Assembly: GCA_965655095.1 (NCBI GenBank) | Contig: OZ296648.1 | Coordinates: 110,298,001 to 110,362,000, forward strand | Direction of reading: 5' to 3' | Source of the DNA: Haplodiscus bocki | Taxonomy: Eukaryota | Length of the DNA stretch: 64,000 nt | Shown here: positions 3,001 through 56,916 of the stretch, piece by piece | Numbering within the stretch: the stretch's first letter is position 1 | Layout: every line of letters starts with the position of its first letter | Notes under the pieces: generated by a model | Seen by the model: the letters and a program-made list of their open reading frames with translations, nothing else | Told to the model about the DNA's origin: nothing | Databases searched by the model: none | Position numbers and translations under genes: made by a program

Positions 3001-3290
3001 TGGGTGACCTAAGACAACGCTGTTCATTGAAGGAAGTCTTAGGAAGGTATCTTCCAGTTTATGCTCAATAATTTTGAATAGCACGTCAATTTGCCCAAGG
3101 ACTTTCACATTGCGCCCTGATGCTACCCTGACATATAAAAATGACGCTTGTTTCAATTCCGAGAGGGAATTTGGCAATGCTTCTCTGAGTTTTTCATAAA
3201 AAATGGCCAGCTTGGCGTTAGCACATGCTCCCGTGTCAATTCTTGCTATTCTCTTTAACATCACTGTCAAATTTCAAAGGTGATTACATC
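1..3290 (-). pseudogene. pol: Gypsy pol pseudogene (aspartic protease, RT, RNase H, integrase)
   Basis: DTGA protease motif, RT and RH remnants, integrase HHCC and core fragments in PR-RT-RH-INT order. Confidence 0.85.
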
Positions 3291-5336: not shown

Positions 5337-5341
5337 CGAGG
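5337..5341 (+). repeat. Left target-site duplication CGAGG of the Copia element
   Basis: Identical to 47805-47809 and directly abuts the TG start of the LTR. Confidence 0.92.
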
Positions 5342-5424
5342 TGTGTAAATTGTTAAAGAGTCACTATTTCAGTTATTATGTCGTGGGGCTTAAATTCAAT
5401 GTTATAGCTCTGGCATTTTTCACA
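5342..5424 (+). repeat. Copia 5' LTR (83 bp)
   Basis: TGTGTAAATTG...CATTTTTCACA with short terminal inverted repeats; 8 substitutions and no indels versus 47722-47804. Confidence 0.93.
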
Positions 5425-5435
5425 TGGTATCAGGA
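5425..5435 (+). promoter_or_regulatory. Primer-binding site TGGTATCAGGA
   Basis: Begins with TGG immediately after the LTR-terminal CA; resembles a tRNA-iMet or tRNA-Leu PBS. Confidence 0.8.
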
Positions 5436-5440
5436 ACACA

Positions 5441-7368
5441 ATGGTCTCGTACAAAGCCCCACCCGCATGGACTGAGGACATGACCTTCGAATCGTGGAAT
5501 GCAGAGACTGAATTATGGGTCGCAGTGACGGATTTGAAAAAGGAGCAACACGCACCAGCCGTGACGTTGACATTGGCTATCAGAAGCGAGAAGTCGCGAA
5601 AGAGCTAAGTTTACAGGAGTTGCATGCAGAAGATGGTTTGGCCAAACGTCCGACAAAGCTCAAAGACACATTTGATAAGGAGGCCGTCGACGTGTCTTTC
5701 CAGGACTACGTAAAATTTGAGTCAATTCGACGTTCAGATGATGTTGACATGAGCACATACAATCTAGAGCTCGACAGGGCGCATGCCAGACTTGGGAAAC
5801 ACAGCATGACAGTTCCCGACAGTGTGTTGGCATGCAAGTTATTGTATTCCTCAATTATTGATGCCAAAGAGCGAACGATGGTACTTGCAACCACGCAGAA
5901 ACTCGAGTACAAAATAATGAAGTCCTCGCTGAAACGAATTTCCAAAGATACTGTAAGCGCTCCTTCGTGTTCGACAGGACCTCTGAAGGAAGAGCCTGTT
6001 TTTGTTGCTTCTGATGAAAGCGCAAAATCAGAAGAGACGGCTTTTTGTGTAAATAAATGGCGGAATAAAATGTGGCGGTATCGACTGGTTAACTCCACGA
6101 ATGCAGGAAGAAACCCAGTAGGTGCAAGGGAAAGGTGACTAAATGTGCGACTTGCGGTTCTCTCAACCACTATGCCAAGAAATACCCGGAAAATCCAGAA
6201 AAATACGGCCAGGAGCCCAATAATGAGAAGAGAAAGAATTCCGAAAAAGATGAAGAAGTTTATCTTACCTTTGCCTCATTGCCCGGTGATTTATCGAAAT
6301 GTCTTTGCAAGGCCTTTTTGGACACTGGGTGCACAAGCGTTGCAAAAGAGGAATGGTCCCTGGACTATCTCAGTAAGCTAACGGCATTAGAAAGAAAAAG
6401 CACGACGAACAATGCATCTAGAGTAAAAATAATGTTTGAGGGATGAACAGAAGTTAGTGCGTAGACAAACCTGCGTCTATTGGCAGTTTCAGTTTTCGGA
6501 TAAGAACTCAAATAATTGACGGACATCTGCCGTTCCACATTTCGATTCGGAAAATGAAGAACATGGGTGCGAATTTAAAGCTTTCAGATGGTATTTTGAC
6601 AATCGACTCGGCAGGTGTGTCAGTTGATGTTGAGACTTTGGAATCAGCACATATCGCTGGTTCTATTGTGACACAGAAAAAACATGAAATTGCACTGCTG
6701 ACATTAGAGAATAATCGCCAGATTTTGGAGAGCCTGCACAAACAATTTGGCCACTTCTCGGGAGCAAAACTTAAAGATCCACTGAAATCGGCAGGAAAAC
6801 AGCCACAAGAAGTGTTGGAGTCTGTCGATCGTGTTTGCGAGGAATGTAGCAAATGTCAGAAGTCTGGACGCAATTAAGAAAAACAGTGTGTTTCACTTCC
6901 ATTGTCGCGCCAATTGAATGATGTGGTCGCCATCGACTTATATGAACTAACAGAGCTGGGCGGAGGTGTCTTTTACCTACACGTCATTGAACTTTCTACA
7001 AGTTTCAGTCAGGCGTGCTTGATTTTAGACAAAACTGCAGGAACTATTGTTAACGGTTTCAACAGGGCGTGGATGTTCGCTTTTGGAGCGCCGAATGAAG
7101 TTTTGAGCGACAACGGAAGAGAAATCGATAATGTGGTTTTCAAGGAAAATGGGGAGCAATTCAATTTTTCTGTCAACACAACCGCGGCTCACAGCCCCTG
7201 ATCCAACGGATGTTGTGAACGTCAAAACGTGTTAATCACTGAAACGTTTCTGAAAGTACGTGCTTCGAAGCTTTCCGCCGATTCAGCGCTATGCTTGCAG
7301 TACGGTGTTTTGGCTAAAAAAATGCTTGTCAATGTATCTGGATTCTCACTTTACCAGTTAGTGTATGG
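5441..7368 (+). pseudogene. Single-copy part of the Copia polyprotein: gag, zinc knuckle, protease, integrase N-terminus and core (frameshifted)
   Basis: ATG at 5441 (MVSYKAPPAWTEDMTFESW); KCATCGSLNH knuckle; AFLDTGCTS protease; LHKQFGH...CEECSKC; VAIDL...SDNGRE; SP*SNGCCERQN. Confidence 0.9.
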
Positions 7369-10300
7369 CAAGCTTCCAATTTATCCCAGTGCCCTGAATA
7401 GTGGGCTACCCGCACTTAATACCGATGTTTCATCCGACGTTAACAGAAAGCACCTTGTGGCGCTCAATTCGGCGAGGCCGGCATTTGTTCAAGTGGAATC
7501 ATCTGAAAGGATAAAATGAGCACTGAGATGCAGGTCGAGGCCAGGTAATTCAGTTGTCTCTACTGGAGACAGCGTTTTCTTCTATAGGTCAAAAAAGTGG
7601 CATGGGCCTGGAAATGTCACTGACAAAAATAGAGAAATTATATTTGTTAGACACAGTGGAAGTCTATACAAAGTGCACGATACTGAAGTCAGATTGGTCA
7701 GATATCTGTCCATGTCTACACCGCCACGTGATCGAGTTATTCCCATTCCGACGAATGAAACTCAAAACGGAACTGTATATAACGATGAGTTACCAAGAGA
7801 GTGCGGTGACTCGGAGGCTGAACGGGAAGAACGCGAGCCGAATGATGAATCCGTCCCTACAACAATTAGCAAAGACGACAATAGAGGAAATGAACAAGAA
7901 TCGGGGTTGCAGTCGCAGCTGGTTGTTATTATTTCCCACAAGAAAGTTCTGGTCTCAGGTTATTTGTCTATCCCGAGGAGGAATGAACATATCCGTATAT
8001 TCTCCAACACTTGACAAGAACCCGTGACTGAAATTGTCGTCAGCCAAGCCGGTGGTAATCATAAAAAACGGCTAAATATCGACTGTACCAGCCCTGACAC
8101 ATTAATTGGACAACGGGGTCCAATTGATTTCAAAAACGATGTTTCTCACTGGGAAACCGTCAAAAACACAGAATCCGATTTGTTACGGGTGTGCCAGATG
8201 TTACAGGAGACGAATACGCGGGTGCCCAACGACAGGAACCTCTGTCTTGGCAACAAACCAAGTTTTTCACGCTGTTGATAACGTAGGTCAAACTGCAATT
8301 GACACCAGGTGGGTTCTAACTATCAAATCAGACGGATCTGGTAAGGGCACTGGTTGCTAAAGGCTTCCAGGATCCCGATCTTGATAAACTGGTAAAAACT
8401 TCGCCAACTTGCTCACGGGATGCATTTCGTGTGGTTTCGGCTATTTCAAGTTCCCAAAATTGGATCCATCAGACCTTCGATAAAACCACAGCATTCCTCC
8501 AAGGTAAAGCGATCTGTTTACTTTGTCCCGCCTTCTAAAAGCAAAGTGGCTTCCAAAAACGTCTCATGGAAATTGGACAAAAGCGTATATGGATCAAACG
8601 ATGCGTCCAGGATGTGGTTTGAGAAGGTGTGTGATAAGTGGAAGTTACTTGGCGCCATTCAGTCTGATTTCTATCCATGTATTTTCATATGGAAGAATGG
8701 AAACGGTTTACAAGTATGTTAGCCACGCATGTTGAAAGTTTTTGGATTTCTGGAGAAATTTTGGGTGTACGCTCGTTAATCTGCTGATTGCGAAAGGAAA
8801 GTATCATTGGTATGGTTCAAGATCTTCTAGGCAGATCGTTTGAGAATGGAATTGAGAGCCGCAGGTGCGAATTTTCAAATGAACTTTAGTCAGTATATTC
8901 AGACGATCTCAAATTTACAAATTCAACCTGGTTTGAAAGCTAATGTTGATTTGGATGAAACTTGCAATCAGCGTTGAGAGAGCTCGTTGGAAAACTACTA
9001 TAGCCCGCTATGAATGGTGGACCAGATCTCTCTTCTGATACCAGTAACCTCGCGGCCTGTTTCAGCAGCAAACGTACGCGACCTGAGTCGCGCAAAAAAA
9101 CTCAATCGTAGATTGCAGTCTGAGAAGTATATCCCACTTAGTTTTCCAAATTTGGGTCTTTCAAAGGATTGGAATATACTGGTATTCACTGATGCATCTT
9201 TCTCCATTGTTCGTGATACTAGAACACAAGGGGTATTTTTGATATTTCTCGTCAATGAGAAAACGCTTCAGGCATGCCTTCTTTCATGGCGTAGATCTAG
9301 ACTACGCAGAGTTGCCAGATCTAGACTTTCTGCTGAGGTAATTGCTTGTATTGAAAGAGCAGATACGGCGGTTTTCATCAAGAGACTTCTGTATGGTATT
9401 TTGAACATAAATATCCCTATCTTCGTGAAATTCGACAACCATTCTCTCATGGATGCAGTGTATTCGACTAAGCAAGTAGCCGATAAAAGGCTCGGAGTCG
9501 ATATTTGCTACTTGAGATCTTTAATCAACGACAAACTGGTTGCACAATACAAACAATCTTCTAAACCATCCCAGTGCCCTGAAAAGTGGGCTACCCGCAC
9601 TGAACACCGAGGTTTCATCCGATGTTATCAGAAAAAATCTTGTGGCGCTCAATTCGCCGGGGCAGTCATTCATTCAAGTGGAATCATCTAAAAGGATTAA
9701 AAGAGCACTGAGATGCAAAACGAGGCCAGGTAATTCAAATGTCTCTACTGGAGACAGCGTTTTCTTCTATAGGTCAAAAAAGTGGCATGGGCCTGGCAAA
9801 TTCATTGGAAAAGATGGAAAAATTATTTTTGTTAGACACAGCGGAAGTCTATACAAAGTGCACGATACTGAAGTCAGACTGCTCAGATATCCGTCCATGT
9901 CTACACCGCCACATGATCGAGTTATCCCGATTCCGACGAATGAAACTCAAATAGGAAGTGTATATAACGCTGAGTTACCAAGAGAGTGCGCTGACTCGGA
10001 GGATGAACGGGAAGAACGCGAGCCGAATGATGAATCCGTCCCTACAACAATTAGCAAAGACGACAATCGAGGAAAAGACCAAGAAACGGGGTTGCAGTCG
10101 CAGCTGGTTGCTCGTATTTCCGAAAAGAAAACTTCCGGTCCCAGGTTATTTGTCTATCCCGAGGAGGAATGAACATATCCGTATATTCTCCAACACTTGA
10201 GAAGAACCCGTGACAGAAATTGTTGTCAGCCAAGCCGGTGGTAATCATTAAAACCGGCTAAATATCGACTGTACCAGCCCTGACACATTAATTGGACAAC

Positions 10301-13300
10301 GGGGTCCAATTGATTTCAAAAACGATGTTTCGCACTGGGAAACTGTCAAAAACACAGAATCCGATTTGTTACGGGTGTGCCAGATGTTACAGGAGACGAA
10401 TACGCGGAAGCCCAACGACCCGAACTTCTTTCCTGGCAGACAATTCAAGTTTTTCACGCTGTTGTTAACGTAGGTCAAACTGCAATTGACACCAGATGGG
10501 TTCTAACTACCAAATCAGACGGATCTGGTAAGGGCACTGGTTGCTAAAGGCTTCCAGGATCCCGATCTTGATAAACTGGTAAAAACTTCGCCAACTTGCT
10601 CACGGGATGCATTTCGTGTGGTTTCGGCTATTTCAAGTTCCCAAAATTGGATCCATCAGACCTTCGATAAAACCACAGCATTCCTCCAAGGTAAAGCGAC
10701 CTGTTTACTTTGTCCCGCCTTCTAAAAGCAAAGTGGCTTCAAAAAACGTCTCATGGAAATTGGACAAAAGCGTATATGGATCAAACGATGCGTCCAGGAT
10801 GTGGTTTGAGAAGGTGTGTGATAAGTGGAAGTTACTTGGCGCCATTCAGTCTGATTTCTATCCATGTATTTTCATATGGAAGAACGAAAACGTTTTACAA
10901 GTATGTTAGCCACGCATGTTGATAAACTTTGGATTTCTGGAGAAATTTTGGGTGTACGCTCGTTAATCTGCTGATTGCGAAAGGAAAGTATCATTGGTAT
11001 GGTTCAAGATCTTCTAGGCAGATCGTTTGAGAATGGAATTGAGAGCCGCAGGTGCGAATTTTCAAATGAACTTTAGTCAGTATATTCAGACGATCTCAAA
11101 TTTACAAATTCAACCTGATTTGAAAGCTAATGTTGATTTGGATGAAACTTGCAATCAGCGTTGAGAGAGCTCGTTGGAAAACTACTATAGCCCGCTATGA
11201 ATGGTGGACCAGATCTCTCTTCTGATACCAGTAACCTCGCGGCCTGTTTCAGCAGCAAACGTACGCGACCTGAGTCGCGCAAAAAAACTCAATCGTAGAT
11301 TGCAGTTTGAGAAGTATATCCCACTTAGTTTTCCAAATTTGGGTCTTTCAAAGGATTGGAATATACTGGTATTCACTGATGCATCTTTCTCCATTGTTCG
11401 TGATACTAGAACACAAGGGGTATTTTTGATATTTCTCGTCAATGAGAAAACGCTTCAGGCATGCCTTCTTTCATGGCGTAGATCTACACTACGCAGAGTT
11501 GCCAGATCTAGACTTTCTGCTGAGGTAATTGCTTGTATTGAAAGAGCAGATACGGCGGTTTTCATCAAGAGACTTCTGTATGGTATTCTGAACAGTGATA
11601 TCCCTATCTTCGTGAAATTCGACAACCATTCTCTCATAGATGCAGTGTATTCGACTAAGCAAGTAGCCGATAAAAGGCTCGGAGTCGATATTTGCTACTT
11701 GAGATCCTTAATCAACGACAAACTGGTTGCACAATACAAACAATCTTCTAAACCATCCCAGTGCCCTGAAAAGTGGGCTACCCGCACTGAACACCGAGGT
11801 TTCATCCGATGTTATCAGAAAAAACCTTGTGGCGCTCAATTCGCCGGGGCAGTCATTCATTCAAGTGGAATCATCTAAAAGGATTAAAAGAGCACTGAGA
11901 TGCAAAACGAGGCCAGGTAATTCAAATGTCTCTACTGGAGACAGCGTTTTCTTCTATAGGTCAAAAAAGTGGCATGGGCCTGGCAAATTCATTGGGAAAG
12001 ATGGAAAAATTATTTTTGTTAGACACAGCGGAAGTCTATACAAAGTGCACGATACTGAAGTCAGACTCCTCAGATATCCGTCCATGTCTACACCGCCACA
12101 TGATCGAGCTATCCCGATTCCGACGAATGAAACTCAAATAGGAAGTGTATATAACGCTGAGTTACCAAGAGAGTGCGCTGACTCGGAGGATGAACGGGAA
12201 GAACGCGAGCCGAATGATGAATCCGTCCCTACAACAATTAGCAAAGACGACAATCGAGGAAAAGACCAAGAAACGGGGTTGCAGTCGCAGCTGGTTGTTC
12301 GTATTTCCGACAAGAAAACTTCCGGTCCCAGGTTATTTGTCTATCCCGAGGAGGAATGAACATATCCGTATATTCTCCAACACTTGAGAAGAACCCGTGA
12401 CAGAAATTGTTGTCAGCCAAGCCGGTGGTAATCATTTAAACCGGCTAAATATCGACTGTACCAGCCCTGACACATTAATTGGACAACGGGGTCCAATTGA
12501 TTTCAAAAACGATGTTTCGCACTGGGAAACTGTCAAAAACACAGAATCCGATTTGTTACAGGTGTGCCAGATGTTACAGGAGACGAATACGCGGGAGCCC
12601 AACGACCGGAACTTCTTTCCTGGCAGACAATTCAAGTTTTTCACGCTGTTGTTAACGTAGGTCAAACTGCAATTGACACCAGGTGGGTTCTAACTACCAA
12701 ATCAGACGGATCTGGTAAGGGCACTGGTTGCTAAAGGCTTCCAGGATCCCGATCTTGATAAACTGGTAAAAACTTCGCCAACTTGCTCACGGGATGCATT
12801 TCGTGTGGTTTCGGCTATTTCGAGTTCCCAAAATTGGATCCATCAGACCTTCGATAAAACCACAGCATTCCTCCAAGGTAAAGCGACCTGTTTACTTTGT
12901 CCCGCCTTCTAAAAGCAAAGTGGCTTCAAAAAACGTCTCATGGAAATTGGACAAAAGCGTATATGGATCAAACGATGCGTCCAGGATGTGGTTTGAGAAG
13001 GTGTGTGATAAGTGGAAGTTACTTGGCGCCATTCAGTCTGATTTCTATCCATGTATTTTCATATGGAAGAACGAAAACGTTTTACAAGTATGATAGCCAC
13101 GCATGTTGATAATTTTTGGATTTCTGGAGAAAATTCGGGTGTACGCTCGTTAATCTGCTCATTGCGAAAGGAAAGTATCATTGGTATGGTTCAAGATCTT
13201 CTAGGCAGATCGTTTGAGAATGGAATTGAGAGCCGCAGGTGCGAATTTTCAAATGAACTTTAGTCAGTATATTCAGACGATCTCAAATTTACAAAATTCA

Positions 13301-16300
13301 ACCTGGTTTGAAAGCTAATGTTGATTTGGACGAAACTTGCGATCAGCGTCGAGAGAGCTCGTTGGAAAACTACTATAGCCCGCTATGAATGGTGGACCAG
13401 ATCTCTCTTCTGATACCAGTAACCTCGCGGCCTGTTTCAGCAGCAAAAGTACGCGACCTGAGACGCGCAAAAAAACTCAATCGTAGATTGCAGTTTGAGA
13501 AGTATATCCCACTTACTTTTCCAAATTTTGGTTTTTCAAAGGATTGGAATATACTGGTATTCACTGATGCATCTTTCTCCAATGTTCGTGATACTAGAAC
13601 ACAAGGGGGATTTTTGATATTTCTCGTCAATGAGAAAACGCTTCAGGTATGCCTTCTTTCTTGGCGTAGATCTAGACTACGCAGAGTTGCCAGATCTAGA
13701 CTTTCTGCTGAGGCAATTGCTTGTATTGAAAGAGCAGATACGGCGGTTTTCTTCACGAGACTTCTCTATGGTTTTCTTAACAGTTAAATCCCTACCTTCG
13801 TGAAATCCGACAACCATTCTCTCATAGATGCAGTGTATTCGACTAAGCAAATAGCCGATAAAAGGCTCGGAGTCGATATTTGCTACTTGAGATCCTTAAT
13901 CAACGACAAACTGGTTGCACAATACTAACAATCTTCTAAACCATCCCAGTGCCCGGAATAGTGGGCTACCCGCACTGAACACCGAGGTTTCATCCGATGT
14001 TATCAGAAAAAAACTTGTGGCGCTCAATTCGGCGAGGCAGTCATTCATTCAAGTGGAATCATCTAAAAGGATTAAAAGAGCACTGAGATGCAAAACGAGG
14101 CCAGGTAATTCAAATGTCTCTACTGGAGACAGCGTTTTCTTCTATAGGTCAAAAAAGTGGCATGGGCCGGGCAAATTCATTGGGAAAGATGGAAAAATTA
14201 TTTTTGTTAGACACAGCGGAAGTCTATACAAAGTGCACGATACTGAAGTCAGACTGCTCAGATATCCGTCCATGTCTACACCGCCACATGATCGAGTTAT
14301 CCCGATTCCGACGAATGAAACTCAAATAGGAAGTGTATATAACGCTGAGTTACCAAGAGAGTGCGCTGACTCGGAGAATGAACGGGAAGAACTAGAGCCG
14401 AAGGATGAATCGGTCCCTACAACAATTAGCAAAGACTACAATCGAGGAAATGACCGAGAATCGGGGTTGCAGTCGCAGCTGGTTGTTGGTATTTCCGAAA
14501 AGAAAGTTCCGGTCTCAGGTTATTTGTCTATCCCAAGGACGAATGAACATATCCGTATATTCTCCAACTCTTGAGAAGAACCCGTGACAGGAATTTTTGT
14601 CAGCAAGGCCGGAAAAGCAGGTGGTATTCATAAAAATTGGCTAAATATCGACTATTTCAGCCGTGACACATTAATTGGACAACGGGGTCCAATTGATTTC
14701 AAAAACGATGTTTCGCACTGGGAAACTGTCGAAAACACAGAATCCGTCCTTATTACGGGTGTGCCAGATGTTACAGGAGACGAATACGCGGGAGCCAAAC
14801 GACAGGAACTTCTGTCTTGGCAGACAAACCAAGTTTTTCACGCTGTTGATAACGTAGGTCAAACTGCAATTGAAACCAGGTGGGTTCTAACCACCAAACC
14901 AGACGGATCTGGTAAGGACACTGGTTGCTAAGGTCTTCCAGGATCCCGATCTTGATAAACTGGTAAAAGCTTCGCCAACTTGCTCACGGGACGCATTTCG
15001 TGTGGTTTTGGCTACTTCAAGTTGCCAAAATTGGATCCATCAGACCTTCGATAAAACCACAGCATTCTTCCAAGGTAAACATCTGGAGCGACCTGTTTAC
15101 TTTGTCCCGCCTTCTAAAAGCAAAGTGGCTTCCAAAAATGTCTCATGGAAATTGGACAAAAGCGTATATGGATCAAACGATGCGTCCAGGATGTGGTTTG
15201 AGAAGGTGTGTGATAAGTGGAAGTTACTTGGCGCCATTCAGTCTGATTTCTATCCATGTATTTTCATATGGAAGAACGAAAACGTTTTACAAGTATGATA
15301 GCCACGCATGTTGATAATTTTTGGATTTCTGGAGAAAATTCGGGTGTACGCTCGTTAATCTGCTCATTGCGAAAGGAAAGTATCATTGGTATGGTTCAAG
15401 ATCTTCTAGGCAGATCATTTGAGAATGGAATTGAGAGCCGCAGGTGCGAATAATCAAATGAACTTTAGTCAGTATATTCAGACGATCTCAAATTTACAAA
15501 ATTCAACCTGGTTTGAAAGCTAATGTTGATTTGGACGAAACTTGCGATCAGCGTCGAGAGAGCTCGTTGGAAAACTACTATAGCCCGCTATGAATGGTGG
15601 ACCAGATCTCTCTTCTGATACCAGTAACCTCGCGGCCTGTTTCAGCAGCAAAAGTACGCGACCTGAGACGCGCAAAAAAACTCAATCGTAGATTGCAGTT
15701 TGAGAAGTATATCCCACTTACTTTTCCAAATTTTGGTTTTTCAAAGGATTGGAATATACTGGTATTCACTGATGCATCTTTCTCCAATGTTCGTGATACT
15801 AGAACACAAGGGGGATTTTTGATATTTCTCGTCAATGAGAAAACGCTTCAGGTATGCCTTCTTTCTTGGCGTAGATCTAGACTACGCAGAGTTGCCAGAT
15901 CTAGACTTTCTGCTGAGGCAATTGCTTGTATTGAAAGAGCAGATACGGCGGTTTTCTTCACGAGACTTCTCTATGGTTTTCTTAACAGTTAAATCCCTAC
16001 CTTCGTGAAATCCGACAACCATTCTCTCATAGATGCAGTGTATTCGACTAAGCAAATAGCCGATAAAAGGCTCGGAGTCGATATTTGCTACTTGAGATCC
16101 TTAATCAACGACAAACTGGTTGCACAATACTAACAATCTTCTAAACCATCCCAGTGCCCGGAATAGTGGGCTACCCGCACTGAACACCGAGGTTTCATCC
16201 GATGTTATCAGAAAAAAACTTGTGGCGCTCAATTCGGCGAGGCAGTCATTCATTCAAGTGGAATCATCTAAAAGGATTAAAAGAGCACTGAGATGCAAAA

Positions 16301-37300: not shown

Positions 37301-40300
37301 TACAAGGTATCTTAGCCACGCATGTTGATAATTTTTGCATTTCTGGAGAAAATTTGGGTGTACGCTCGGTAATCTGCTCATTGCGAAAGGTATGTATCCT
37401 TGGTAAGGTTCAAGATCTTCCAGCAGATAAACTGAGAATGAAATTGACAGCCGCAGGTACGAATCTTCAAATGAACCTTAGTCAGTATATTCAGACGATC
37501 TCAAAATATCAAATTCAACCCGGTTTGAAAGCTAATGATGATTTGGATGAAACTTGCCATCAGCGTTGAGAGAGCTCGTTGGAAAACTACTATAGCCCGC
37601 TATGAATGGTGGACCAGATCTCTCTTCTGATACCAGTAACCTCGAGGCCTGTTTCAGTAGCAAAAGTACGCCACCTGAGGCGGGCAAAAAATCTCAGTCG
37701 TAGATTGCAGTTTGAGAAGTATATCCCACTTAGTTTTCCAAATTTGGGTCTTTCAAAGGATTGGAATACACTGGTATTTACTGATGCATCTTTGTCCAAT
37801 GTTCGTGATATTAGAACACAAGGGGGATTTTTGATATTTCGCGTCAATGTGAAAACGCTTCAGGCATGTCTTCTTTCTTGGTGTAGCTCTAGACTACGCA
37901 AAATTGCCAGATCTAGACTTTCGGCTGAGGCAATTGCCTGTATTGAAGGAGCAGATACGGCGGTTTTCATCAAGAGACTTCTGCATGGTATTCTGAATAG
38001 TGGTATCCATATCTGCGTGAAATCCGACAACCAATCTCTCGTAGATGCAGTGTATTCGACTAAGCAAGTCGCCGATTAAAAGCTCAGAGTCGATTTTTGC
38101 TACTTCAGATCCTTAATCAACGACAAACTGGTTGCAGAATACACTTGGATACCTACAAAGCATCAGCTGGCCGACACAATGACAAAATCTAGAAGCCAAG
38201 CGACCGAAATTATGATTCCGGTGCTTAGAACAGGCAATTTTCCGAATACCCTGTTTCCCACGTTTAAATGGTTAGAATTTGTGTTATTTGTAACTTACTG
38301 GCCTTTTAAACATGCATAATACATTATTTTTCAACATTCCGGCGCCATATACACTTCATTACATGTATTTGTGGATTTACGGTGAGATTCTGTTGATATA
38401 TTCATTTCGTAACTTCCAGTGCAGCAACCAACAATTGATCATGTAATTAATTACTTGACTACTCATGCGCTGTTAATATATGCTTTTCAAATATGCGAGT
38501 AGGTCACTTCCACTAATAACGGACAATTTGACAACGCTTGCCGTAATATTATCAGAAAGCACCTTGTGGCGCTTAATTCGGCGAGGCAGGCTTTTGTTCA
38601 AGTGGAATCATCTGAAAGGATTAAATGAGCACTGAGATGCAAATCGAGGCCAGGTAATTCAATTGTCTCTACTGGAGACAGCGTTTTCTTCTATAGGTCA
38701 AAAAAGTGCCATGGGCCTGGCAATGTCACTGGGAAAGATGGAGAAAGTATATTTGTTAGACACAGCGGAAGTCTATACAAAGTGCACGATACTGAAGTCA
38801 GATTGGTCAGATATCCGTCCATGTCTACACCGCCACGTGATCGAGTTATCCCCATTCCGACGAATGAAACTCAAAACGGAAGTGTATATAACGCTGAGTT
38901 ACCAAGAGAGTGCGGTGACTCGGAGGATGAACGGGAAGAACGCGAGCCGAATGATGAATCCGTCCCTACAACAATTAGCAAAGACGACAATCGAGGAAAT
39001 GACCAAGAACCGGGGTTGCAGTCGCAGCTGGTTGTTCGTATTTCCGACAAGAAAGTTCCAGTCCCAGGTTTTTTGTCTATCCCAGGAACGAATGAACATA
39101 TCCGTATATTCTCCAACACTTGAGAAGAACCCGCGACAGGAATTGTTGTCAGCAAGGCCGGAAAAGCAGGTGGTATTCATAAAAATTGGCTAAATATCGA
39201 CTATATCAGCCGTGACACATTAATTGGACAACGGGGTCCAATTGATTTCAAAAACGATGTTTCGCACTGGGAAACTGTCGAAAACACAGAATCCGTCCTT
39301 ATTGCGGGTGTGCCAGATGTTACAGGAGACGATTATGCGGGAGCCAAACGACAAGAACTTCTGTCTTGGCAGACAAACCAAGTTTTTCACGCTGTTGATA
39401 ACGTAGGTCAAACGGCAATTGACACCAGGTGGGTTCTAACTACCAAGCCAGACGGATCTGGCAAGGACACTGGATGCTAAGGGCTTCCAGGAACCCGATC
39501 TTGATAAACTGGTAAAAGCTTCGCCAACTTGCTCACGGGACGCATTTCGTGTGGTTTTGGCTGCTTCAAGTTCCCAAAATTGGATCCATCAGACCTTCCA
39601 GAAAACCACAGCATTCCTCCAAGGTAAACATCTGGAGCGACCTGTTTACCTTGTCCCGCCTTCTAAAAGCAAAGTGGCTTCCAAAAGTAACTCATGGAAA
39701 TTGGACAAAAGCGTATATGGATTAAACGATGCGTCCAGGATGTGGTTTGAGAAGGTGTGTCATAAGTCGAAGTTACTTGGCGCAATTCAGTCTGACTTCT
39801 AGCCACGTATTTTCATATTGGAAGAATGAACATGGTTTACAAGTTATCTTAGCCACGCATGTCGATAATTTTTGCATTTCTGGAGAAAATTCGGGTGTAC
39901 GCTCGTTAATCTGCTCATTGCAAAAGGTATGTATCCTTGGTAAGGTTCAAGATCTTCCAGCAGATCAATTGAGAATGAAATTGACAGCCGCAGGTGCGAA
40001 TTTTCAAATGAACCTTAGTCAGTATATTCAGACGATCTCAAAATATCAAATTCAACCCGGTTTGAAAGCTGATGATGATTTGGATGAAACTTGCGATCAG
40101 CGTTGAGAGAGCTCGTTGGAAAACTACTATAGCCCGCTACGAATGGTGGACCAGATCTCTCTTCTGATACCAGTAACCTCGAGGCCTGTTTCAGTAGCAA
40201 AAGTACGCGACCTGAGGCGGGCAAAAAAACTCAGTCGTTGATTGCAGTTTGAGAAGTATATCCTACTTAGTTTTCCGAATTTGGGTCGTTCAAAGGACTG

Positions 40301-43300
40301 GAATACACTGGTATTTACTGATGCATCTTTGTCCAATGTTCGTGATCTTAGAACACAAGAGGGATTTTTGATATTTCTCGTGAATGTGAAAACGCTTCGG
40401 GCATGTCTTCTTTCATGGTGTAGCTCTAGACTACGCAGAATTGCCAGATTTAGACTTTCTGCTGAGGCAATTGCCTGTATTGAAGGAGCAGGTACGGCGG
40501 TTTTCATCAAGACACTTCTGTATGGTATTCCGAACAGTGATATCCTATCTTCGTGAAATCCGACAACCATTCTCTCATAGATGCAGTGTTTTCGATTAAG
40601 CAAGTCGCCGATAAAAGGCTAAGGGTCGATATTTGCTACTTGAGATCCTTATTCAACGACAAACTGGTTGCAAAACACAACCAAGTTTCTAAATCATCCC
40701 AGTGCCCCGAATAATCGGCTGCCCGCGCTGAATACCGATGTTTCATCCGACGTTATCAGAAAGCACCTTGTGGCGCCTAATTCGGCGAGGCAGGCATTTG
40801 TTCAAGGTAAATCATCTGAATGGATTAAATGAGCACTGAGATGCAAATCGAGGCCAGGTAATTCAATTGTCTCTACTGGTGACAGCGTTTTCTTCTATAG
40901 GTCAAAAAAGTGGCATGGGCCTGGCAATGTCACTGGGAAAGATGGAGAAAGTATATTTGTTAGACACAGCGGAAGTCTATACAAAGTGCACGATACTGAA
41001 GTCAGATTGGTCAGATATCCGTCCATGTCAACACCGCCACGTGATCGAGTTATCCCCATTCCGACGAATGAAACTCAAAACGGAATTGTATATAACGCTG
41101 AGTTACCAAGAGAGTGCGGTGACTCGGAGGATGAACGGGAAGAACGCGAGCCGAATGATGAATCCGTCCCTACAACAATTAGCAAAGACGACAATCGAGG
41201 ACATGACCAAGAATTGGGGTTGCAGTTGCAGCTGGTGGTTCGTTTTTCCGACAAGAAAGTTCCGGTCTCAGGTTATCTGTCTATCCCGAGCAGGAATGAA
41301 CATATCCGTATATTCTCCAACTCTTGAGAAGAACCCGTGACAGGAATTGTTGTCAGCAAGGCCTGAAAAGCTGGTGGTATTCATAAAAATTGGCTAAATA
41401 TCGACTGTATCAGCCGTGACACATTAATTGGACAACGGGGTCCAATTGATTTCAAAAACGATGTTTCGCACTGGGAAACTGTCGAAAACACAAAATCCGT
41501 CCTTATTACGGGTGTCCCAGATGTCACAGGAGACAAATACGCGGGAGCCAAACGGCAGGAACTTCTCTCTTGGCAGACAAACCAAGTTTTTCACGCTGTT
41601 GATAACGTAGGTCAAACTGCAATTGACACCAGGTGGGTTCTAACTACCAAGCCAGACGGATCTGGCAAGGACACTGGTTGCTAAGGGCTTCCAGGATCCC
41701 GATCTTGATAAACTGGTAAAACCTTCGCCAACTTGCTCACGGGACGCATTTCGTGTGGTTTTGGCTACTTCAAGTTCCCAAACTTGGATCCATCAGACCT
41801 TCGAGAAAACCACAGCATTCCTCCAAGGTAAACATCTGGAGCGACATGTTTACCTTGTCCCGCCTTCTAAAAGCAAAGTGGCTTCCAAAAATAACTCATG
41901 GAAATTGGACAAAAGCGTATATGGATTAAACGATGCGTCCAGGATGTGGTTTGAGAAGGTGTGTCATAAGTGGAAGTTACTTGGCGCAATTCAGTCTGAC
42001 TTCTATCCATGTATTTTCATATGGAAGAATGAAAACGATTTACAAGTTATCTTAGCCACGCATGTCGATAATTTTTGCAGTTCTGGAGAAAATTCGGGTG
42101 TACGCTCGTTAATCTGCTCATTGCGAAAGGTATGTATCCTTGGTAAGGTTCAAGATCTTCCAGCAGACCAATTGAGAATGAAATTGACAGCCGCAGGTGC
42201 GAATATTCAAATGAACCTTAGTCAGTATCTTCAGACGATCTCAAAATATCAAGTTCAACCCGGTTCGAAAGCTGATGATGATTTGGATGAAACTTGCGAT
42301 CAGCGTTGAGAGAGCTCGTTGGAAAACTACTATAGCCCGCTACGAATGGTGGACCAGGTCTCTCTTCTGATACCAGTAACCTCGAGGCCTGTTTCAGTAG
42401 CAAAAGTACTCGACCTGAGGCGGGCAAAAAAACTCAGTCGTAGATTGCAGTTTGAGAAGTATATCCCGCTTAGTTTTCCAAATTTGGGTCTTCCAAAGGA
42501 TTGGAATATACTGGTATTTACTGATGCATCTTTGTCCAATGTTCGTGATATTAGAACACAAGGGGGATTTTTGATATTCCTCGTCAATGTGAAAATGCTT
42601 CAGGCATGTCTTCTTTCATGGTGTAGCTCTAGACTACGCAGAATTGCCAGATCTAGACTTTCTGCTGAGGCAATTGCCTGTATTGAAGGAGCAGATACGG
42701 CGGTTTTCATCGAGACTTCTGTATGGTATTCTGAAAAGTGATATCCTATCTTCGTGAAATCCGACAACCATTCTCTCACAGATGCAGTGTATTCGACTAA
42801 GCAAGTCGCCGATAAAAGGCTCAGGGTCGATATTTGCTACTTGAGATCCTTATTCAACGACAAACTGGTTGCAGAATACAACGAAGCTTCTAAATTATCC
42901 CAGTGCCCCGAATAATCGGCTACCCGCTCTGAATACCAATGTTTCATCCGACGTTATCAGAAAGCACCTTGTGGCGCCTAATTCGGCGAGGCAGGCTTTT
43001 GTTCAAGGGGAATCATCTGAAAGGATTAAATGAGCACTCAGATGCAGATCGAGGCCAGATAAATCAATTGTCTCTACTGGAGACAGCGTTTTCTTCCATA
43101 GGTCAAAAAGTGGCATGGGCCTGGCAGTGTCACTGGGAAAGATGGAGAAAGTATATTTGTTAGACACAGCGGAAGTCTATACAAAGTGCACGATACTGAA
43201 GTCAGATTGGTCAGATATCCGTCCATGTCTACACCGCCACGTGATCGAGTTATCCCCATTCCGACGAATGAAACTCAAAACGGAATTGTATATAACGCTG

Positions 43301-46300
43301 AGTTACCAAGAGAGTGCGGTGACTCGGAGGATGAACGGGAAGAACGCGAGCCGAATGATGAATCCGTCCCTACAACAATTAGCAAAGACGACAATCGAGG
43401 AAATGACCAAGAATCGGGGTTGCAGTTGCAGCTGGTTGTTCGTTTTTCCGACAAGAAAGTTCCGGTCTCAGGTTATCTGTCTATCCCGAGGAGGAATGAA
43501 CATATCCGTATATTCTCCAACTCTTGTGAAGAACCCGTGACAGGAATTGTTTTCAGCAAGGCCTGAAAAGCTGGTGGTATTCATAAAAATTGGCTAAATA
43601 TCGACTGTATCAGCCGTGACACATTAATTGGACAACGGGGTCCAATTGATTTCAAAAACGATGTTTCGCACTGGGAAACTGTCGAAAACACAAAATCCGT
43701 CCTTATTACGGGTGTCCCAGATGTTACAGGAGACGAATACGCGAGAGCCAAACGACAGGAACTTCTCTCTTGGCAGACAAACCAAGTTTTTCACGCTGTT
43801 GATAACGTAGGTCAAACTGCAATTGACACCAGGTGGGTTCTAACTACCAAGCCAGACGGATCTGGCAACGACACTGGTTGCTAAGGGATTCCAGGATCCC
43901 GATCTTGATAAACTGGTAAAACCTTCGCCAACTTGCTCACGGGACGCATTTCGTGTGGTTTTGGCTACTTCAAGTTCCCAAACTTGGATCCATCAGACCT
44001 TCGAGAAAAGCACAGCATTCCTCCAAGGTAAACATCTGGAGCGACCTGTTTACCTTGTCCCGCCTTCTAAAAGCAAAGTGGCTTCCAAAAATAACTCCTG
44101 GAAATTGGACAAAAGCGTATATCGATTAAACGATGCGTCCAGGATGTGGTTTGAGAAGGTGTGTCATAAGTGGAAGTTACTTGGCGCAATTCAGTCTGAC
44201 TTCTATCCATGTATTTTCATATGGAAGAATGAAAACGGTTTACAAGGTATCTTAGCCACGCATGTCGACAAATTTTGCAGTTCTGGAGAAAATTCGGGTG
44301 TACGCTCGTTAATCTGCTCATTGCGAAAGGTATTTATCATTGGTAAGGTTCAACATCTTCAAGCAGATCATTTGGGAATGAAATTGACAGCCGGGGGTGC
44401 GAATATTCAAATGAACCTTAGTCAGTATATTCAGACGATCTCAAAATATCAAGTTCAACCCGGTTTGGAAGCTGATGATGATTTGGATGGAACTTGCGAT
44501 CAGCGTTGAGAGAGCTCGTTGGAAAACTACTATAGCCCGCTACGAATGGTGGACCAGGTCTCTCTTCTGATACCAGTAACCTCGAGGCCTGTTTCAGTAG
44601 CAAAAGTACTCGACCTGAGGCGGGCAAAAAAACTCAGTCGTAGATTGCAGTTTGAGAAGTATATCCCACTTAGTTTTCCAAATTTGGGTCTTCCAAACGA
44701 TTGGAATATACTGGTATTTACTGATGCATCTTTGTCCAATGTTCGTGATATTAGAACACAAGGGGGATTTTTGATATTCCTCGTCAATGTGAAAACGCTT
44801 CAGGCATGTCTTCTTTCATGGTGTAGCTCTAGACTACGCAGATTTGCCAGATCTAGACTTTCTGCTGAGGCAATTGCCTGTATTGAAGGAGCAGATACGG
44901 CGGTTTTCATCGAGACTTCTGTATGGTATTCTGAAAAGTGATATCCTATCTTCGTGAAATCCACAACCATTCTCTCATAGATGCAGTGTATTCGATTAAG
45001 CAAGTCGGCGATAAAAGGCTCAGGGTCGATATTTGCTACTTGAGATCCTTATTCAACGACAAACTGGTTGCAGAATACAACGAAGCTTCTAAATTATCCC
45101 AGTGCCCCGAAAAATCGGCTACCCGCGCTGAATACCAATGTTTCATCCGACGTTATCAGAAAGCACCTTGTGGCGCCTAATTCGGCGAGGCAGGCATTTG
45201 TTCAAGGGGAATCATCTGAAAGGATTAAATGAGCACTCAGATGCAAATCGAGGCCAGGTAATTCAATTGTCTCTACTGGAGACAGCGTTTTCTTCCATAG
45301 GTCAAAAGGTGGCATGGGCCTGGCAGTGTCACTGGGAAAGATGGAGAAAGTATATTTGTTAGACACAGCGGAAGTCTATACAAAGTGCACGATACTGAAG
45401 TCAGATTGGCAGATATCCGTCCATGTCTACACCGCCACGTGATCGAGTTATCCCCATTTCGACGAATGAAACTCAAAACGGAAGTGTATATAACGCTGAG
45501 TTACCAAGAGAGTGCGGTGACTCGGAGGATGAACGGAAAGAACGCGAGCCGAATGATGAATCCGTCCCTACAACAATTAGCAAAGACGACAATCGAGGAA
45601 ATGACCAAGAATCGGGGTTGCAGTTGCAGCTGGTTGTTCGTTTTTCCGACAAGAAAGTTCCGGTCTCAGGTTATCTGTCTATCCCGAGGAGGAATGAACA
45701 TATCCGTATATTCTCCAACACTTGAGAAGAACCCGTGACAGGAATTGTTGTCAGCAAGGCCGGAAAAGCAGGTGGTTTTCAAAAAAATTGGCTAAATATC
45801 GACTATATCAGCCGTGACACATTAATTTGACAACGGGGTCCAATTGATTTCAAAAACGATGTTTCGCACTGGGAAACTGTCGAAAACACAGAATCCGTCC
45901 TTAATAGGGGTGTCCCAGATGTTACAGGAGACGAATACGCGGGAGCCAAACGACAGGAACTTCTGTCTTGGCAGACAAACCAAGTTTTTCACGCTGTTGA
46001 TAACGTAGGTCAAACTGCAATTGACACCAGGTGGGTTCTAACTACCAAGCCAGACAGATCTGGCAAGGACACTGGTTGCTAAGGGCTTCCAGGATCCCGA
46101 TCTTGATACACTGGTGAAAGCTTCGCCAACTTGCTCCCGGGAGGCATTTCGTGTGGTTTTGGCTACTTCAAGTTCCCAAAATTGGATCCATCAGACCTTC
46201 GAGAAAACCACAGCATTCCCCCAAGGTAAACATCTGGAGCGACCTGTTTACTTTGTCCCGCCTTCTAAAAGCAAAGTGGCTTCCAAAAATATCTCATGGA

Positions 46301-47280
46301 ATTTGGACAAAAGCGTATATGGATTACACGATGCGTCCAGGATGTGGTTTGAGAAGGTGTGTCATAAGTGGAAGTTACTTGGAGCCATTCAGTCTGATTT
46401 CTATCCATGTATTTTCATATGGAAGAAAGAAAACGGTTTACAAGGTATCTTAGCCACGCATGTTGATAATTTTTGCATTTCTGGAGGAAATTCGGGTGTA
46501 CGCTCGTTAATCTGCTCATTGCGAAAGGTATGTATCCTTGGTAAGGTTCAAGATCTTCCAGCAGATCATTTGAGAATGAAATTGACAGCCGCAGGTGCGA
46601 ATATTCAAATGAACCTTAGTCAGTATAGTCAGACGATCTCGAAATATCAAATTCAACCCGGTTTGAAAGCTGATGATGATTTGGATGAAACTTGCGATCA
46701 GCGTTGAGACAGCTCGTTGGAAAACTACTATAGCCCGCTACGAATGGTGGACCAGGTCTCTCTTCTGATACCAGTAACCTCGAGGCCTGTTTCAGTAGCA
46801 AAAGTACTCGACCTGAAGCGGGCAAAAAAACTCAATCGTAGATTGCAATTTGAGAAGTATATCCCACTTAGTTTTCCAAATTTGGGTCTTTCAAAGGATT
46901 GGAATACACTGGTATTTACTGATGCATCTTTGTCCAATGATCGTGATATTAGAACACAAGGGGGATTTTTGATATTTCTCGTTAATGTGAAAACGCTTCA
47001 GGCATGTCTTCTTTCATGGTGTAGCTCTAGGCTACGCAGAATTGCCAGATCTAGACTTTCTGCTGAGGCAATTGCCTGTATTGAAGGAGCAGATACGGCG
47101 GTTTTCATCAAGACACTTCTGCATGGTATTCCGAACAGTGATATCTCATCTTCGTGAAATCCGACAACCATTCTCTCATAGATGCAGTGTATTCGACTAA
47201 GCAAGTCGCCGATAAAAATCTCAGAGTCGATAATTGCTATTTTAGATCCTTAATCAACGACAAACTGCTTGCAGAATCCA
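7369..47280 (+). repeat. Tandem array of 18 units of ~2.2 kb (Copia INT C-terminus + RT + RNase H fragment)
   Basis: Unit starts read from the RH/INT junction: about 7369, 9554, 11741, 13929, 16134, 18337, 20539, 22741, 24933, 27132, 29331, 31534, 33738, 35941, 38550, 40682, 42883, 45082. Period is 2185-2205 bp except around 38.1-38.5 kb. The ORF track repeats the same peptides with this period. Confidence 0.96.
38144..38549 (+). repeat. Internal second copy of the RNase H end and 3' UTR of the Copia element
   Basis: Matches 47281-47685 (about 17 differences in 406 bp by manual count), then jumps back to integrase sequence TATCAGAAAGC. Confidence 0.92.
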
Positions 47281-47423
47281 CTTGGATACCTACAAAGCAT
47301 CAACTGGCCGACACAATGACAAAATCTAGAAGCCAAGAGACCGAAATTATGATTCCGGTGCTTAGAACAGGCAGTTTTCCGAATACCATGTCTCCCACGT
47401 TTAAATGGTTAGAATTTGTGTAA
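47154..47423 (+). pseudogene. Terminal RNase H fragment and stop codon of Copia pol
   Basis: SDNHSLIDAVYST...WIPTKHQLADTMTK, the Copia ADxxTK terminal motif; followed by a ~300-bp 3' UTR and the 3' LTR. Confidence 0.88.
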
Positions 47424-47721
47424 TTTGTAACTTACTGGCCTTTTAAACATGCATAATACATTATTTTTCAACATTCCGGCGCCATATACACTTCATTATA
47501 TGTATTTGTGGATTTACGGTGAGATTCTGTTGATATATTCTTTTCTTAACTTCCAGTGCAGCGACCAACAATTGATTATGTAATTAATTATTAACTACTC
47601 ATGCGCTGTTAATATATGCTTTTCAAATATGCGGGCAGGTCACTTCCACTAATTACGGACAGTTTGACAACGCTTGCCGTAATATGGAAAGAATGATCGA
47701 TGCCTAATTAATCAAGTAATG

Positions 47722-47804
47722 TGTGTAAATTGTTAATGAGTGACTATTTTAGTTATAATGTCATGGGGCTTTAATTCAATGTTATAGCTCGGGCAATTTT
47801 CACA
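47722..47804 (+). repeat. Copia 3' LTR (83 bp)
   Basis: TGTGTAAATTG...CAATTTTCACA; direct repeat of 5342-5424. Confidence 0.93.
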
Positions 47805-47809
47805 CGAGG
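47805..47809 (+). repeat. Right target-site duplication CGAGG
   Basis: Identical to 5337-5341. Confidence 0.92.
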
Positions 47810-55880: not shown

Positions 55881-56916
55881 CATAGAGCCCTAGATGAAAG
55901 AAACATATTGAGCATTTCGTGAGGAAACTCATTTCGAAAATCAACGAAAGATGCCATCATACTTTGGTAGCAATTTTCAAATATTATTTGCCAGAATTGA
56001 AACTAACCTTCGAAAATCGACTCCAATAATTTTCCTTACGTTAAATATCCCTTTTATTAGGCCTGGTACTAAATTGCTAGCAATTATTCGCACTTCGCCG
56101 CCTCCGGTTTCCTCCTCGACGTAAAGGTAATGAAACCTTCTGAAAAATTTCCTTAAAATCAAAGAACCTGGTCAAATGCTTTAGCGAATTTCGTAAGAGT
56201 TCAACAATTTCCGGAATTATATTGAATGAGATTTCTAGAGAGCGAAGGCTCGAAAAAATCAAATGTGGGGCTACAAATATCTCAAGTTAGGGCTGCTGAA
56301 ACCATACAACAAACCCAAATGTACTGATAACGCGGAAAAAATGCCTCAATCGCGGAACGTCAAACATTGCAACTGACATTTAAAATGTAGAGATGAATTA
56401 AAAAACCTTTATGTCCAACAACATTCATAATGCATTAGTTAACTCGTCTAGGCGCAGATTTTAACAGTTTTTCCAGCAACCGCCAAAGTAAGCTCAATCA
56501 CCCAAAATTAACTGCGGAAATGACATTAAAATTTGATTTTTCTCAAAGTTTTTTGAGGTAGTAAAGCAAGCCTTATACGGACTTGATTCGGTAGTTCTTC
56601 TAAATTCGGGTGGACAATTGTTGATTTATTGCGATAAAAAGTTATCATTCGCTTTCTTGAAGCTGGACTGTGGGAGAAGCCAATCGCTTATTTGTCTCAG
56701 GAAACATTCCATTACAGAAAGAAATTTCAACTTAATGAAAAAATGTTCGCATTTCCCGTTTCATGTAAACATTTTAAGTGCAGAGCCAATCTTTTTCTGA
56801 TTGTGAAAATTTGTGGATTTTCGGTAGCGTTATTTTCCTCGCTATTGTACCGCGACCTTTATTTACAAGCCACCAAAAAAGTGGTATAACATTATCAATT
56901 GAAGATGAAAAATTAC

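What the first reader, a model, noticed from the sequence alone, without database searches (positions are those of the whole stretch)
5337..47809. A 42.5-kb single LTR retrotransposon: an internal pol segment turned into an 18-unit, 2.2-kb macrosatellite
Seen directly: only two LTRs, one PBS and one gag-PR-INT(N) region, with a perfect CGAGG TSD bracketing 42.5 kb. Between them lie 18 head-to-tail copies of INT(C)-RT-RH, 16 of the 17 joins using the same novel junction (RH ...GCAGAATACA + AC + CAAGCTTC... integrase, original position 7369). Collapsing the array gives about 4.7 kb, a normal Copia length. This is therefore neither a cluster of independent insertions nor a tandem of whole elements sharing LTRs; it is a satellite born in place inside coding sequence. 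Established knowledge: TE-derived satellites usually come from LTR/UTR or short internal repeats, so a 2.2-kb pol-derived unit still sitting in its parent with intact LTRs and TSD is unusual. Inference: this is a snapshot of macrosatellite birth by unequal exchange or rolling-circle/re-replication.
Basis: partly seen in the sequence, partly recalled or inferred. Interest (0 to 1): 0.88.

Follow-up and report, generated by a model that had tools for sequence, protein, structure and literature searches.

The report
Dead Copia element with amplified pol segment
One old, dead Copia-type retrotransposon had a 2.2-kb piece of its enzyme-coding region copied head-to-tail 18 times in place; it is a clean, datable example of a known way that mobile elements seed large tandem repeats, not a new kind of thing.

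Summary
Window 5337-47809 is one Ty1/Copia element. It has two 83-bp LTRs (75/83 identical), a perfect CGAGG target-site duplication, and one PBS/gag/PR/INT-N region.

Inside are 18 head-to-tail units of about 2.2 kb (INT C-terminus, RT, most of RNase H). Sixteen joins share one illegitimate junction, J1. One join, J2, carries a 405-bp copy of the 3' tail.

A 4.74-kb unamplified relative exists on another chromosome. J1 occurs nowhere else in the 1.5-Gb genome. A second public assembly is colinear at 99.92% with no unit-size indel, so assembly expansion is very unlikely.

The array is not newborn:
- Units differ by 2-10% and all are riddled with stops.
- Variation is even across codon positions.
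- The deepest unit split (JC 0.088) matches the LTR divergence (0.103).
- Divergence rises with distance, units are staggered mosaics, and one 1.1-kb exact repeat at a one-unit offset marks a very recent duplication.

This fits one illegitimate join followed by long-running unequal exchange, not a single rolling-circle burst.

The scan has noted other transposon-derived macrosatellites on other DNA of this genome. I confirmed the periodicity of one. I rate this a new member of a known kind, of moderate interest.

The parts
5337..5341 (+). 5' copy of the target-site duplication CGAGG
   Evidence: Read directly; identical to 47805-47809.
5342..5424 (+). 5' LTR, 83 bp, TGTG...CACA
   Evidence: 75/83 identical to the 3' LTR. 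Only two LTR copies in the window.
5425..5437 (+). Primer-binding site TGGTATCAGGAAC, directly after the LTR
   Evidence: It resembles the tRNA-Met-type PBS TGGTAGCAGAGC reported for GalEa/CoRex Copia elements (PMC3587641).
5438..7368 (+). Single-copy gag, protease and integrase N-terminus plus core. Includes a decayed zinc knuckle CATCGSLNHYAKKY near 6140, the protease motif LDTGCT near 6320, and the rve core at 6902-7198.
   Evidence: Translations. Pfam rve E=1e-4 here and 39 bits in relative L011. Present once in the window.
7369..38143 (+). Units U1-U14 (INT C-terminus, RT, most of RNase H), about 2.2 kb each, joined by junction J1
   Evidence: BLAST ladder, unit table, junction listing. 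Pfam RVT_2 55.9 bits on the U8 ORF 23710-24354.
9545..9570 (+). First copy of junction J1 (RH end + 2-nt filler + INT position 7369); example of the 16 J1 joins
   Evidence: With up to 3 mismatches the J1 42-mer occurs 10 times in the whole genome, all inside this array.
13249..17379 (+). Most recent one-unit duplication. Exact repeats 13249-14392 = 15454-16597 (1144 bp) and 14516-15173 = 16722-17379 (658 bp).
38144..38548 (+). Internal copy of the 3' tail (RNase H C-terminus plus 3' UTR), ending at junction J2
   Evidence: 388/404 identical to 47281-47690. Short-read contigs bridge J2 in two samples.
38549..47280 (+). Units U15-U18; U15 lacks the first 71 bp
47281..47721 (+). Original 3' tail: RNase H C-terminus (WIPTKHQLADTMTK) and 3' UTR
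   Evidence: Translation. Aligns to the tails of relatives.
47722..47804 (+). 3' LTR
47805..47809 (+). 3' copy of the target-site duplication CGAGG

Best explanation
A roughly 4.7-kb Ty1/Copia retrotransposon inserted once, making the CGAGG duplication (shown).

At about the same time or soon after, one illegitimate join with two filler bases connected a point inside RNase H to a point just after the integrase core. This made a 2.2-kb tandem duplication of INT(C)-RT-RH (the junction is shown; the repair pathway is inferred).

The two homologous units then misaligned repeatedly during sister-chromatid or homologue exchange, or during replication restart. Each event added or removed about one unit (inferred from the pattern). 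The array reached 18 units.

A second illegitimate join (J2) duplicated the 3'-most unit(s) together with 405 bp of the tail when divergence was about 4%.

The DNA is non-coding junk that decays neutrally. The array is still turning over, as shown by a near-exact 2-kb repeat at a one-unit offset. No function is implied.
For: Single insertion:
- Two LTRs, one TSD and one gag/PR/INT-N block.
- The family makes 5-bp TSDs elsewhere, for example GTAAA at L015.
- Unamplified relatives of 4.4-4.9 kb each carry one copy of the unit region.

One founding junction:
- 16 joins are variants of J1.
- J1 is found nowhere else in 1.5 Gb.

Stepwise local growth:
- In the tree, neighbours cluster: (U1-5)(U6-7)U8(U9-10)(U11-14)(U15-18).
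- Mean divergence rises from 4.5% at lag 1 to 8.2% at lag 16. Spearman 0.53, with 0 of 5000 permutations as high.
- Units are staggered mosaics. For example, the 5' part of U3 matches U2 and its 3' part matches U4.
- Adjacent joins share private J1 variants in pairs.
- There are exact 1144-bp and 658-bp repeats at a one-unit offset.

Timing: LTR JC 0.103 (95% CI of p 0.043-0.181), deepest unit split 0.088, the 5' 450 bp of U1 0.098, tail against tail copy 0.041.

Neutral decay:
- Every frame of every unit has 7-55 stops.
- Variable columns by codon position are 72:83:64, p=0.29.

Reality of the array:
- The second assembly, ENA ERZ26859043 ctg88061, is colinear with window 1-56705 at 99.92% identity, with 37 mismatches, 5 small gaps and no unit-size indel.
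- Short-read contigs from two samples cover 25-27 of 30 bins at 98% identity or better and bridge J2.
Against: - The repair pathway behind J1 and J2 cannot be read from the sequence. J1 could predate integration, or could come from a deletion across a whole-element tandem.
- The second assembly may come from the same individual's reads, so the copy number rests on one or two individuals.
- The LTR date has a wide error, with 8 differences in 83 bp.
- Unequal crossing-over, gene conversion and replication slippage leave overlapping signatures and are not separated here.
- The two right-hand breakpoints (7369 and about 7440) lie only 71 bp apart, which a purely random-break model does not predict.
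Confidence: 0.8

Rival explanations
1. The first duplication (J1) was made before integration, by a non-homologous template switch of reverse transcriptase from the RNase H region back to the integrase region. A two-unit cDNA integrated, and only the later growth happened in the chromosome.
For: The deepest unit split (JC 0.088-0.098) cannot be told apart from the LTR divergence (0.103). A 2-nt filler at J1 fits RT template-switch junctions as well as end joining; this point rests on general knowledge.
Against: No other genomic copy carries J1, and all relatives have one unit. The date match is loose because the LTR confidence interval is wide.
Confidence: 0.12
2. The element first became a whole-element tandem sharing an LTR (LTR-int-LTR-int-LTR). 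Deletions spanning tail-LTR-gag-PR-INT(N) then created J1, and likewise J2. This is how McGurk and Barbash interpret internal-to-internal tandems.
For: PMC5932611 reports that internal-to-internal tandems of LTR elements are present in most strains and are consistent with deletions spanning head-to-tail junctions. The left breakpoint of J2 lies only about 31 bp before the LTR.
Against: It needs two rare events for each junction where one suffices. No internal LTR remnant is present. An 83-bp LTR is a poor substrate for LTR-LTR exchange, which is an inference.
Confidence: 0.05
3. The array was made in one burst by rolling-circle replication of an excised circle, or by re-replication, then re-inserted or resolved in place.
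For: All units share one junction, as a circle-derived concatemer would.
Against: Divergence is graded with distance and ranges from 0 to 10%. The tree is nested and spatially ordered, and units are staggered mosaics. A burst predicts a star tree with no distance effect. J2 needs a separate event.
Confidence: 0.02
4. The array is an assembly artefact, an over-expanded repeat.
For: Long tandem repeats are error-prone. The one near-exact 2-kb repeat at a one-unit offset could in principle be a one-unit error.
Against: Units differ by 2-10% in a tree-like way. A second assembly gives the same 18 units at 99.92% identity. Contigs from two samples match unit-specific sequence and J2.
Confidence: 0.01

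Closest known systems
Retrotransposon-derived tandem repeats CRM1TR and CRM4TR of maize (Sharma, Wolfgruber and Presting 2013, PMC3648361)
   Same: The monomer is made wholly of retrotransposon sequence, closed by an illegitimate junction with no usable direct repeat. The repeats are confined to one or two loci, with local homogenisation and growth by non-allelic exchange or conversion over millions of years.
   Different: The maize units come from LTR plus UTR and lie in centromeric regions, and the parent element's boundaries are lost. Here the unit is pure pol coding sequence, and the array still sits between the parent's two LTRs and its TSD.
Internal-to-internal TE tandems in Drosophila melanogaster populations (McGurk and Barbash 2018, PMC5932611)
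   Same: These are tandem junctions between two internal points of LTR retrotransposons, proposed as substrates that unequal exchange can expand into satellites.
   Different: They were detected from short-read junctions, generally at low copy number, and read as deletions across whole-element tandems. Here the fully assembled 18-unit array, its parent and its history are all visible.
Tandem LTR-retrotransposon structures sharing internal LTRs (Morales-Diaz et al. 2025, PMC11899658)
   Same: An array arising from a single LTR-retrotransposon insertion, not from independent insertions.
   Different: Those arrays repeat the whole element with shared LTRs. This one has no internal LTR.
Satellites born from tandem subrepeats in the 3' UTR of Ogre/Tat elements (Vondrak et al. 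2020, PMC7004042)
   Same: A tandem array embedded inside its parent LTR element.
   Different: Those have short monomers in a hypervariable UTR, are carried by many element copies and were later expanded elsewhere. Here there is a 2.2-kb coding-derived unit, one locus, and no spread.

Membership tests
Ty1/Copia (Pseudoviridae) LTR retrotransposon | Direct LTRs with TG...CA ends flanked by a 5-bp target-site duplication | tested here: met
   83-bp LTRs TGTG...CACA, 75/83 identical, with CGAGG on both sides. Relatives show 5-bp TSDs.
Ty1/Copia (Pseudoviridae) LTR retrotransposon | Integrase lies upstream of reverse transcriptase (PR-INT-RT-RH order) | tested here: met
   rve at 6902-7198 lies upstream of RVT_2 at 8420-8719. 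The order is the same in relative L011.
Ty1/Copia (Pseudoviridae) LTR retrotransposon | RT of the RVT_2 (Copia-type) family above Pfam's threshold | tested here: met
   U8 ORF 23710-24354 scores 55.9 bits against RVT_2, cut-off 31.6. Atlas neighbours are RVT_2 clusters.
Ty1/Copia (Pseudoviridae) LTR retrotransposon | tRNA-Met-type PBS next to the 5' LTR, gag zinc knuckle, D(T/S)G protease | tested here: met
   PBS TGGTATCAGGAAC. Zinc knuckle CX2CX4HX4 with the last C now Y. Protease motif LDTGCT. PBS compared with TGGTAGCAGAGC in PMC3587641.
GalEa-like clade of metazoan Copia elements | RT/RH phylogenetic placement within the GalEa clade | not tested
   Only the small size, short LTRs and similar PBS point this way.
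Whole-element LTR-RT tandem (shared internal LTRs) | LTR copies between successive internal regions | tested here: not met
   Word-size-7 BLAST finds LTR sequence only at 5342 and 47722.
Satellite or macrosatellite DNA | Head-to-tail array of kb-scale units at a locus | tested here: met
   18 units of about 2.2 kb over 39.9 kb.
Satellite or macrosatellite DNA | Copy number varies between individuals, or high-copy or multi-locus spread | tested here: inconclusive
   Two assemblies agree on 18 units but may derive from one individual. There is no other locus with J1 or with tandem units, so there is no spread.
Nested or independent insertions | Extra TSDs, extra LTRs, different junctions for each copy | tested here: not met
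   The same junction occurs 16 times. There are no extra LTRs.

The most novel reading that the evidence does not exclude
This array is one output of a genome-wide, sequence-blind process in this species. That process repeatedly turns arbitrary 2-6-kb segments (transposon pieces, gene fragments, a Polinton promoter region) into 20-60-kb macrosatellites. Because this array sits between datable LTRs and still shows a zero-divergence duplication, it could calibrate the rate and step size of that process. The scan's notes list at least eight such arrays. I verified only the periodicity of one: 2.66 kb, 93-97% identity, at C1:123.07 Mb.
Probability: 0.25. Interest if true: 0.6.

Novelty: new member of a known kind. 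Interest (0 to 1): 0.36.

Why it matters
Models of satellite origin propose two stages. First a rare event makes a small tandem, then unequal exchange expands it. Usually only the end product is seen, with the parent sequence and the founding junction lost.

Here every stage is preserved in one locus:
- the parent's LTRs and TSD, which give an internal clock;
- the founding junction with its filler bases;
- a second junction of intermediate age;
- a distance-graded array with staggered mosaics;
- a duplication too recent to have any mismatch.

That makes it a useful teaching and calibration case, for example for estimating events per unit of neutral divergence. It also shows that pol coding sequence, not only LTR or UTR, can seed a kb-unit array in what appears to be an animal genome. 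It reveals no new mechanism or function.

Tried and rejected
- Tandem Repeats Finder found nothing in the array because its longest period is 500 bp. The repeat finder on the two LTR regions taken separately was uninformative.
- A fuzzy-regex scan timed out and was replaced by BLAST.
- Pfam on many short ORF pieces gave no hit for gag, protease or RNase H. These were identified by motif only.
- Rfam found no RNA family in the window.
- No RNA run holds the stretch, so expression is unknown.
- The search for homologous proteins returned only ORFs of the same locus or family from one ENA assembly, so neither the host taxon nor the Copia clade could be named.
- One of the scan's other macrosatellite notes (6.1-kb unit at C1:146.88 Mb) could not be checked, because a 10-kb fetch is too short to show that period.
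- Independent or nested insertions, whole-element tandems, a rolling-circle burst and an assembly artefact were considered and rejected or down-weighted (see the rival explanations).
Only natural ORF pieces were translated.
Full report

Yes. A BLAST of the first unit against the window gives a ladder of 18 head-to-tail copies from 7369 to 47280, with a period of about 2.2 kb. TRF missed it only because its longest period is 500 bp.

- The 5' LTR is 5342-5424 and the 3' LTR is 47722-47804. Both are 83 bp with TGTG...CACA ends, and 75 of 83 bases are identical.
- CGAGG flanks both sides (5337-5341 and 47805-47809).
- A word-size-7 BLAST finds LTR sequence only at those two places. The PBS/gag and PR/INT-N blocks occur only once. 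The 3' tail occurs twice.
- Sixteen of the 17 joins are mutated versions of a single junction, J1. It consists of the RNase H end ...GCAGAATACA, two extra bases AC, then CAAGCTTC, which is integrase position 7369.
- The seventeenth join, J2, is different. U14 continues for 405 bp into a copy of the 3' tail (96% identical to 47281-47690), then joins position 72 of the next unit as a blunt join...GTAATAT|TATCAG....

**2. What is the element?**

- Pfam places an integrase core (rve, 6902-7198) upstream of a Copia-type RT (RVT_2). The best RT hit is 55.9 bits on the U8 ORF 23710-24354. A relative shows the same order.
- Motifs read directly:
  - PBS TGGTATCAGGAAC next to the LTR;
  - a decayed gag zinc knuckle;
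  - the protease motif LDTGCT;
  - the RNase H C-terminal stretch WIPTKHQLADTMTK. This last one lies in the tail, so the amplified unit is INT(C)-RT plus most, but not all, of RNase H.
- The genome is 1.5 Gb. The window is C1:110,298,001-110,362,000.
- The genome holds a low-copy family, about eight copies at 78-86% identity. Each has a single unit region. One full copy of about 4.74 kb (L011, chromosome C4) matches the collapsed length of this element.
- Relatives show 5-bp TSDs.
- With up to 3 mismatches, a 42-base J1 pattern occurs ten times in the genome, all inside this array.

**3. Is it an assembly artefact?**

Very unlikely.

- Units differ from each other by 2-10% in a tree-like pattern. 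Assemblers do not invent this.
- A protein search unexpectedly hit ORFs on a 311-kb contig of a different public assembly (ENA ERZ26859043, ctg88061, 77.9x).
- I walked along that contig with five look-ups, which gave 57.7 kb. It is colinear with window 1-56705 at 99.92% identity, with 37 mismatches, 5 small gaps and no unit-size indel.
- Differences occur in the flanks as well as in the array, as expected for another haplotype or individual, or for a different consensus of the same data.
- Short-read-derived contigs from four runs (two samples, one study) match 25-27 of 30 bins of 35500-41499 at 98% identity or better. Contigs bridge J2 in both samples.
- These data may not be fully independent of the reference individual, so copy number in the population is untested.

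**4. How did the array form?**

The units are dead. Every frame of every unit has 7-55 stop codons. Within the RT ORF, the variable columns fall evenly on codon positions (72:83:64, p=0.29). Divergence therefore accumulated neutrally after amplification.

The ML tree, rooted with two relatives, groups physical neighbours: (U1-5)(U6-7)U8(U9-10)(U11-14)(U15-18).

Mean divergence rises from 4.5% between adjacent units to 8.2% at lag 16. Spearman is 0.53, and 0 of 5000 permutations reach it.

Sliding windows show staggered mosaics:
- the 3' part of U1 matches U2;
- the 5' part of U2 matches U3;
- the 3' part of U3 matches U4;
- the 5' part of U4 matches U5.

This is what out-of-register exchanges with breakpoints inside units produce. 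Private J1 variants occur in adjacent pairs.

The most recent event left exact repeats of 1144 bp (13249-14392 = 15454-16597) and 658 bp at a one-unit offset.

The edge of the array is the least homogenised. The first 450 bp of U1 are 5.5-12% from all other units.

A single rolling-circle or re-replication burst predicts a star tree and no distance effect, so it is rejected for the bulk of the array.

**5. Relative dates (JC distances)**

| Comparison | JC distance |
|---|---|
| LTR against LTR | 0.103 (95% CI of p 0.043-0.181) |
| 5' part of U1 against other units | 0.098 |
| Deepest clade split | 0.088 |
| Tail against tail copy (J2) | 0.041 |
| Latest duplication | about 0 |

J1 therefore arose at or soon after insertion. 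J2 came later. Exchange has continued until very recently. This is an old array that is still dynamic, not a newborn one.

**6. What cannot be decided**

- Whether J1 was made in the chromosome by end joining or a replication template switch, in the cDNA by an RT template switch, or by a deletion across a whole-element tandem. The last is the reading of internal-to-internal tandems in PMC5932611. No J1 copy elsewhere and no LTR remnant argue mildly for the in-place, single-event reading.
- Two small oddities are recorded but not explained:
  - The right-hand breakpoints of J1 and J2 lie only 71 bp apart.
  - ATACAC at the RNase H breakpoint is the reverse complement of GTGTAT, just 5' of the integrase breakpoint.

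**7. Comparison with the literature**

- Retrotransposon-derived tandem repeats started by illegitimate recombination and grown by non-allelic exchange are documented. Examples are CRM1TR and CRM4TR, and potato centromeric repeats with monomers of 979 bp to 5.4 kb (PMC3648361).
- Arrays embedded in parent elements are known for Ogre 3' UTRs (PMC7004042).
- Whole-element tandems from single insertions are common in plants (PMC11899658).
- Internal-to-internal TE tandems are reported in most Drosophila strains (PMC5932611).
- What is less usual here is the combination: a purely pol-coding 2.2-kb unit, 18 copies, a fully intact frame of LTRs and TSD, and a readable history.

**8. Context in this genome**

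The scan's earlier notes, which are unchecked AI notes, list many macrosatellites built from transposon or gene pieces elsewhere in this genome. I fetched one, at C1:123.07 Mb, and confirmed a 2.66-kb period with 93-97% identity.

This lowers the singularity of the present array. It raises the possibility of a general, sequence-blind amplification tendency in this species, which I give as the novel case.

**9. Verdict**

- This is a new member of a known kind, of moderate interest.

Noticed in passing
window 56866-57276 (-): An ORF piece matches Pfam RTE1-like (PF05608, 69.8 bits). It is probably an exon of a host TMEM222/RTE1-type gene, about 9 kb downstream of the element.
   Followed up: no
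window 59737-59922: A 30-bp minisatellite, 6.2 copies, 75% matches. It is the only array TRF reported in the window.
   Followed up: no
window 7369 and 7440; 38548/38549: The integrase-side breakpoints of the two independent illegitimate junctions, J1 and J2, lie only 71 bp apart. ATACAC at the RNase H breakpoint of J1 is the reverse complement of GTGTAT, just upstream of its integrase breakpoint. This may be a fragile spot or chance.
   Followed up: partly
window 7894-13248 and 33837-37672: All 29 array differences between the two assemblies fall in two clusters, U1-U3 and U13-U14. None fall in U4-U12 or U15-U18. In 23 of the 29 the alternative base is the one carried by other units. This could be young private mutations, inter-unit conversion, or polishing cross-talk.
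   Followed up: partly
L015 6259-8627 (G000:C2:73.5 Mb): Another family copy carries a small internal tandem duplication of about 160 bp (unit positions 439-601 repeated).
   Followed up: no
L014 2084-9976 (G000:C2:148.05 Mb): In another family copy the 5' end is split into three pieces by about 1.2 kb and 4 kb of foreign DNA, probably nested insertions.
   Followed up: no
L018 and L019 (G000:C1:123,073,371-123,103,370): An unrelated macrosatellite with a 2.66-kb period and 93-97% identity between units, 12.7 Mb downstream on the same chromosome.
   Followed up: partly
window 1-3060: According to an earlier scan note, an env-bearing Gypsy element overlaps the start of the window. ORFs there gave no Pfam hit in my quick check.
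   Followed up: no
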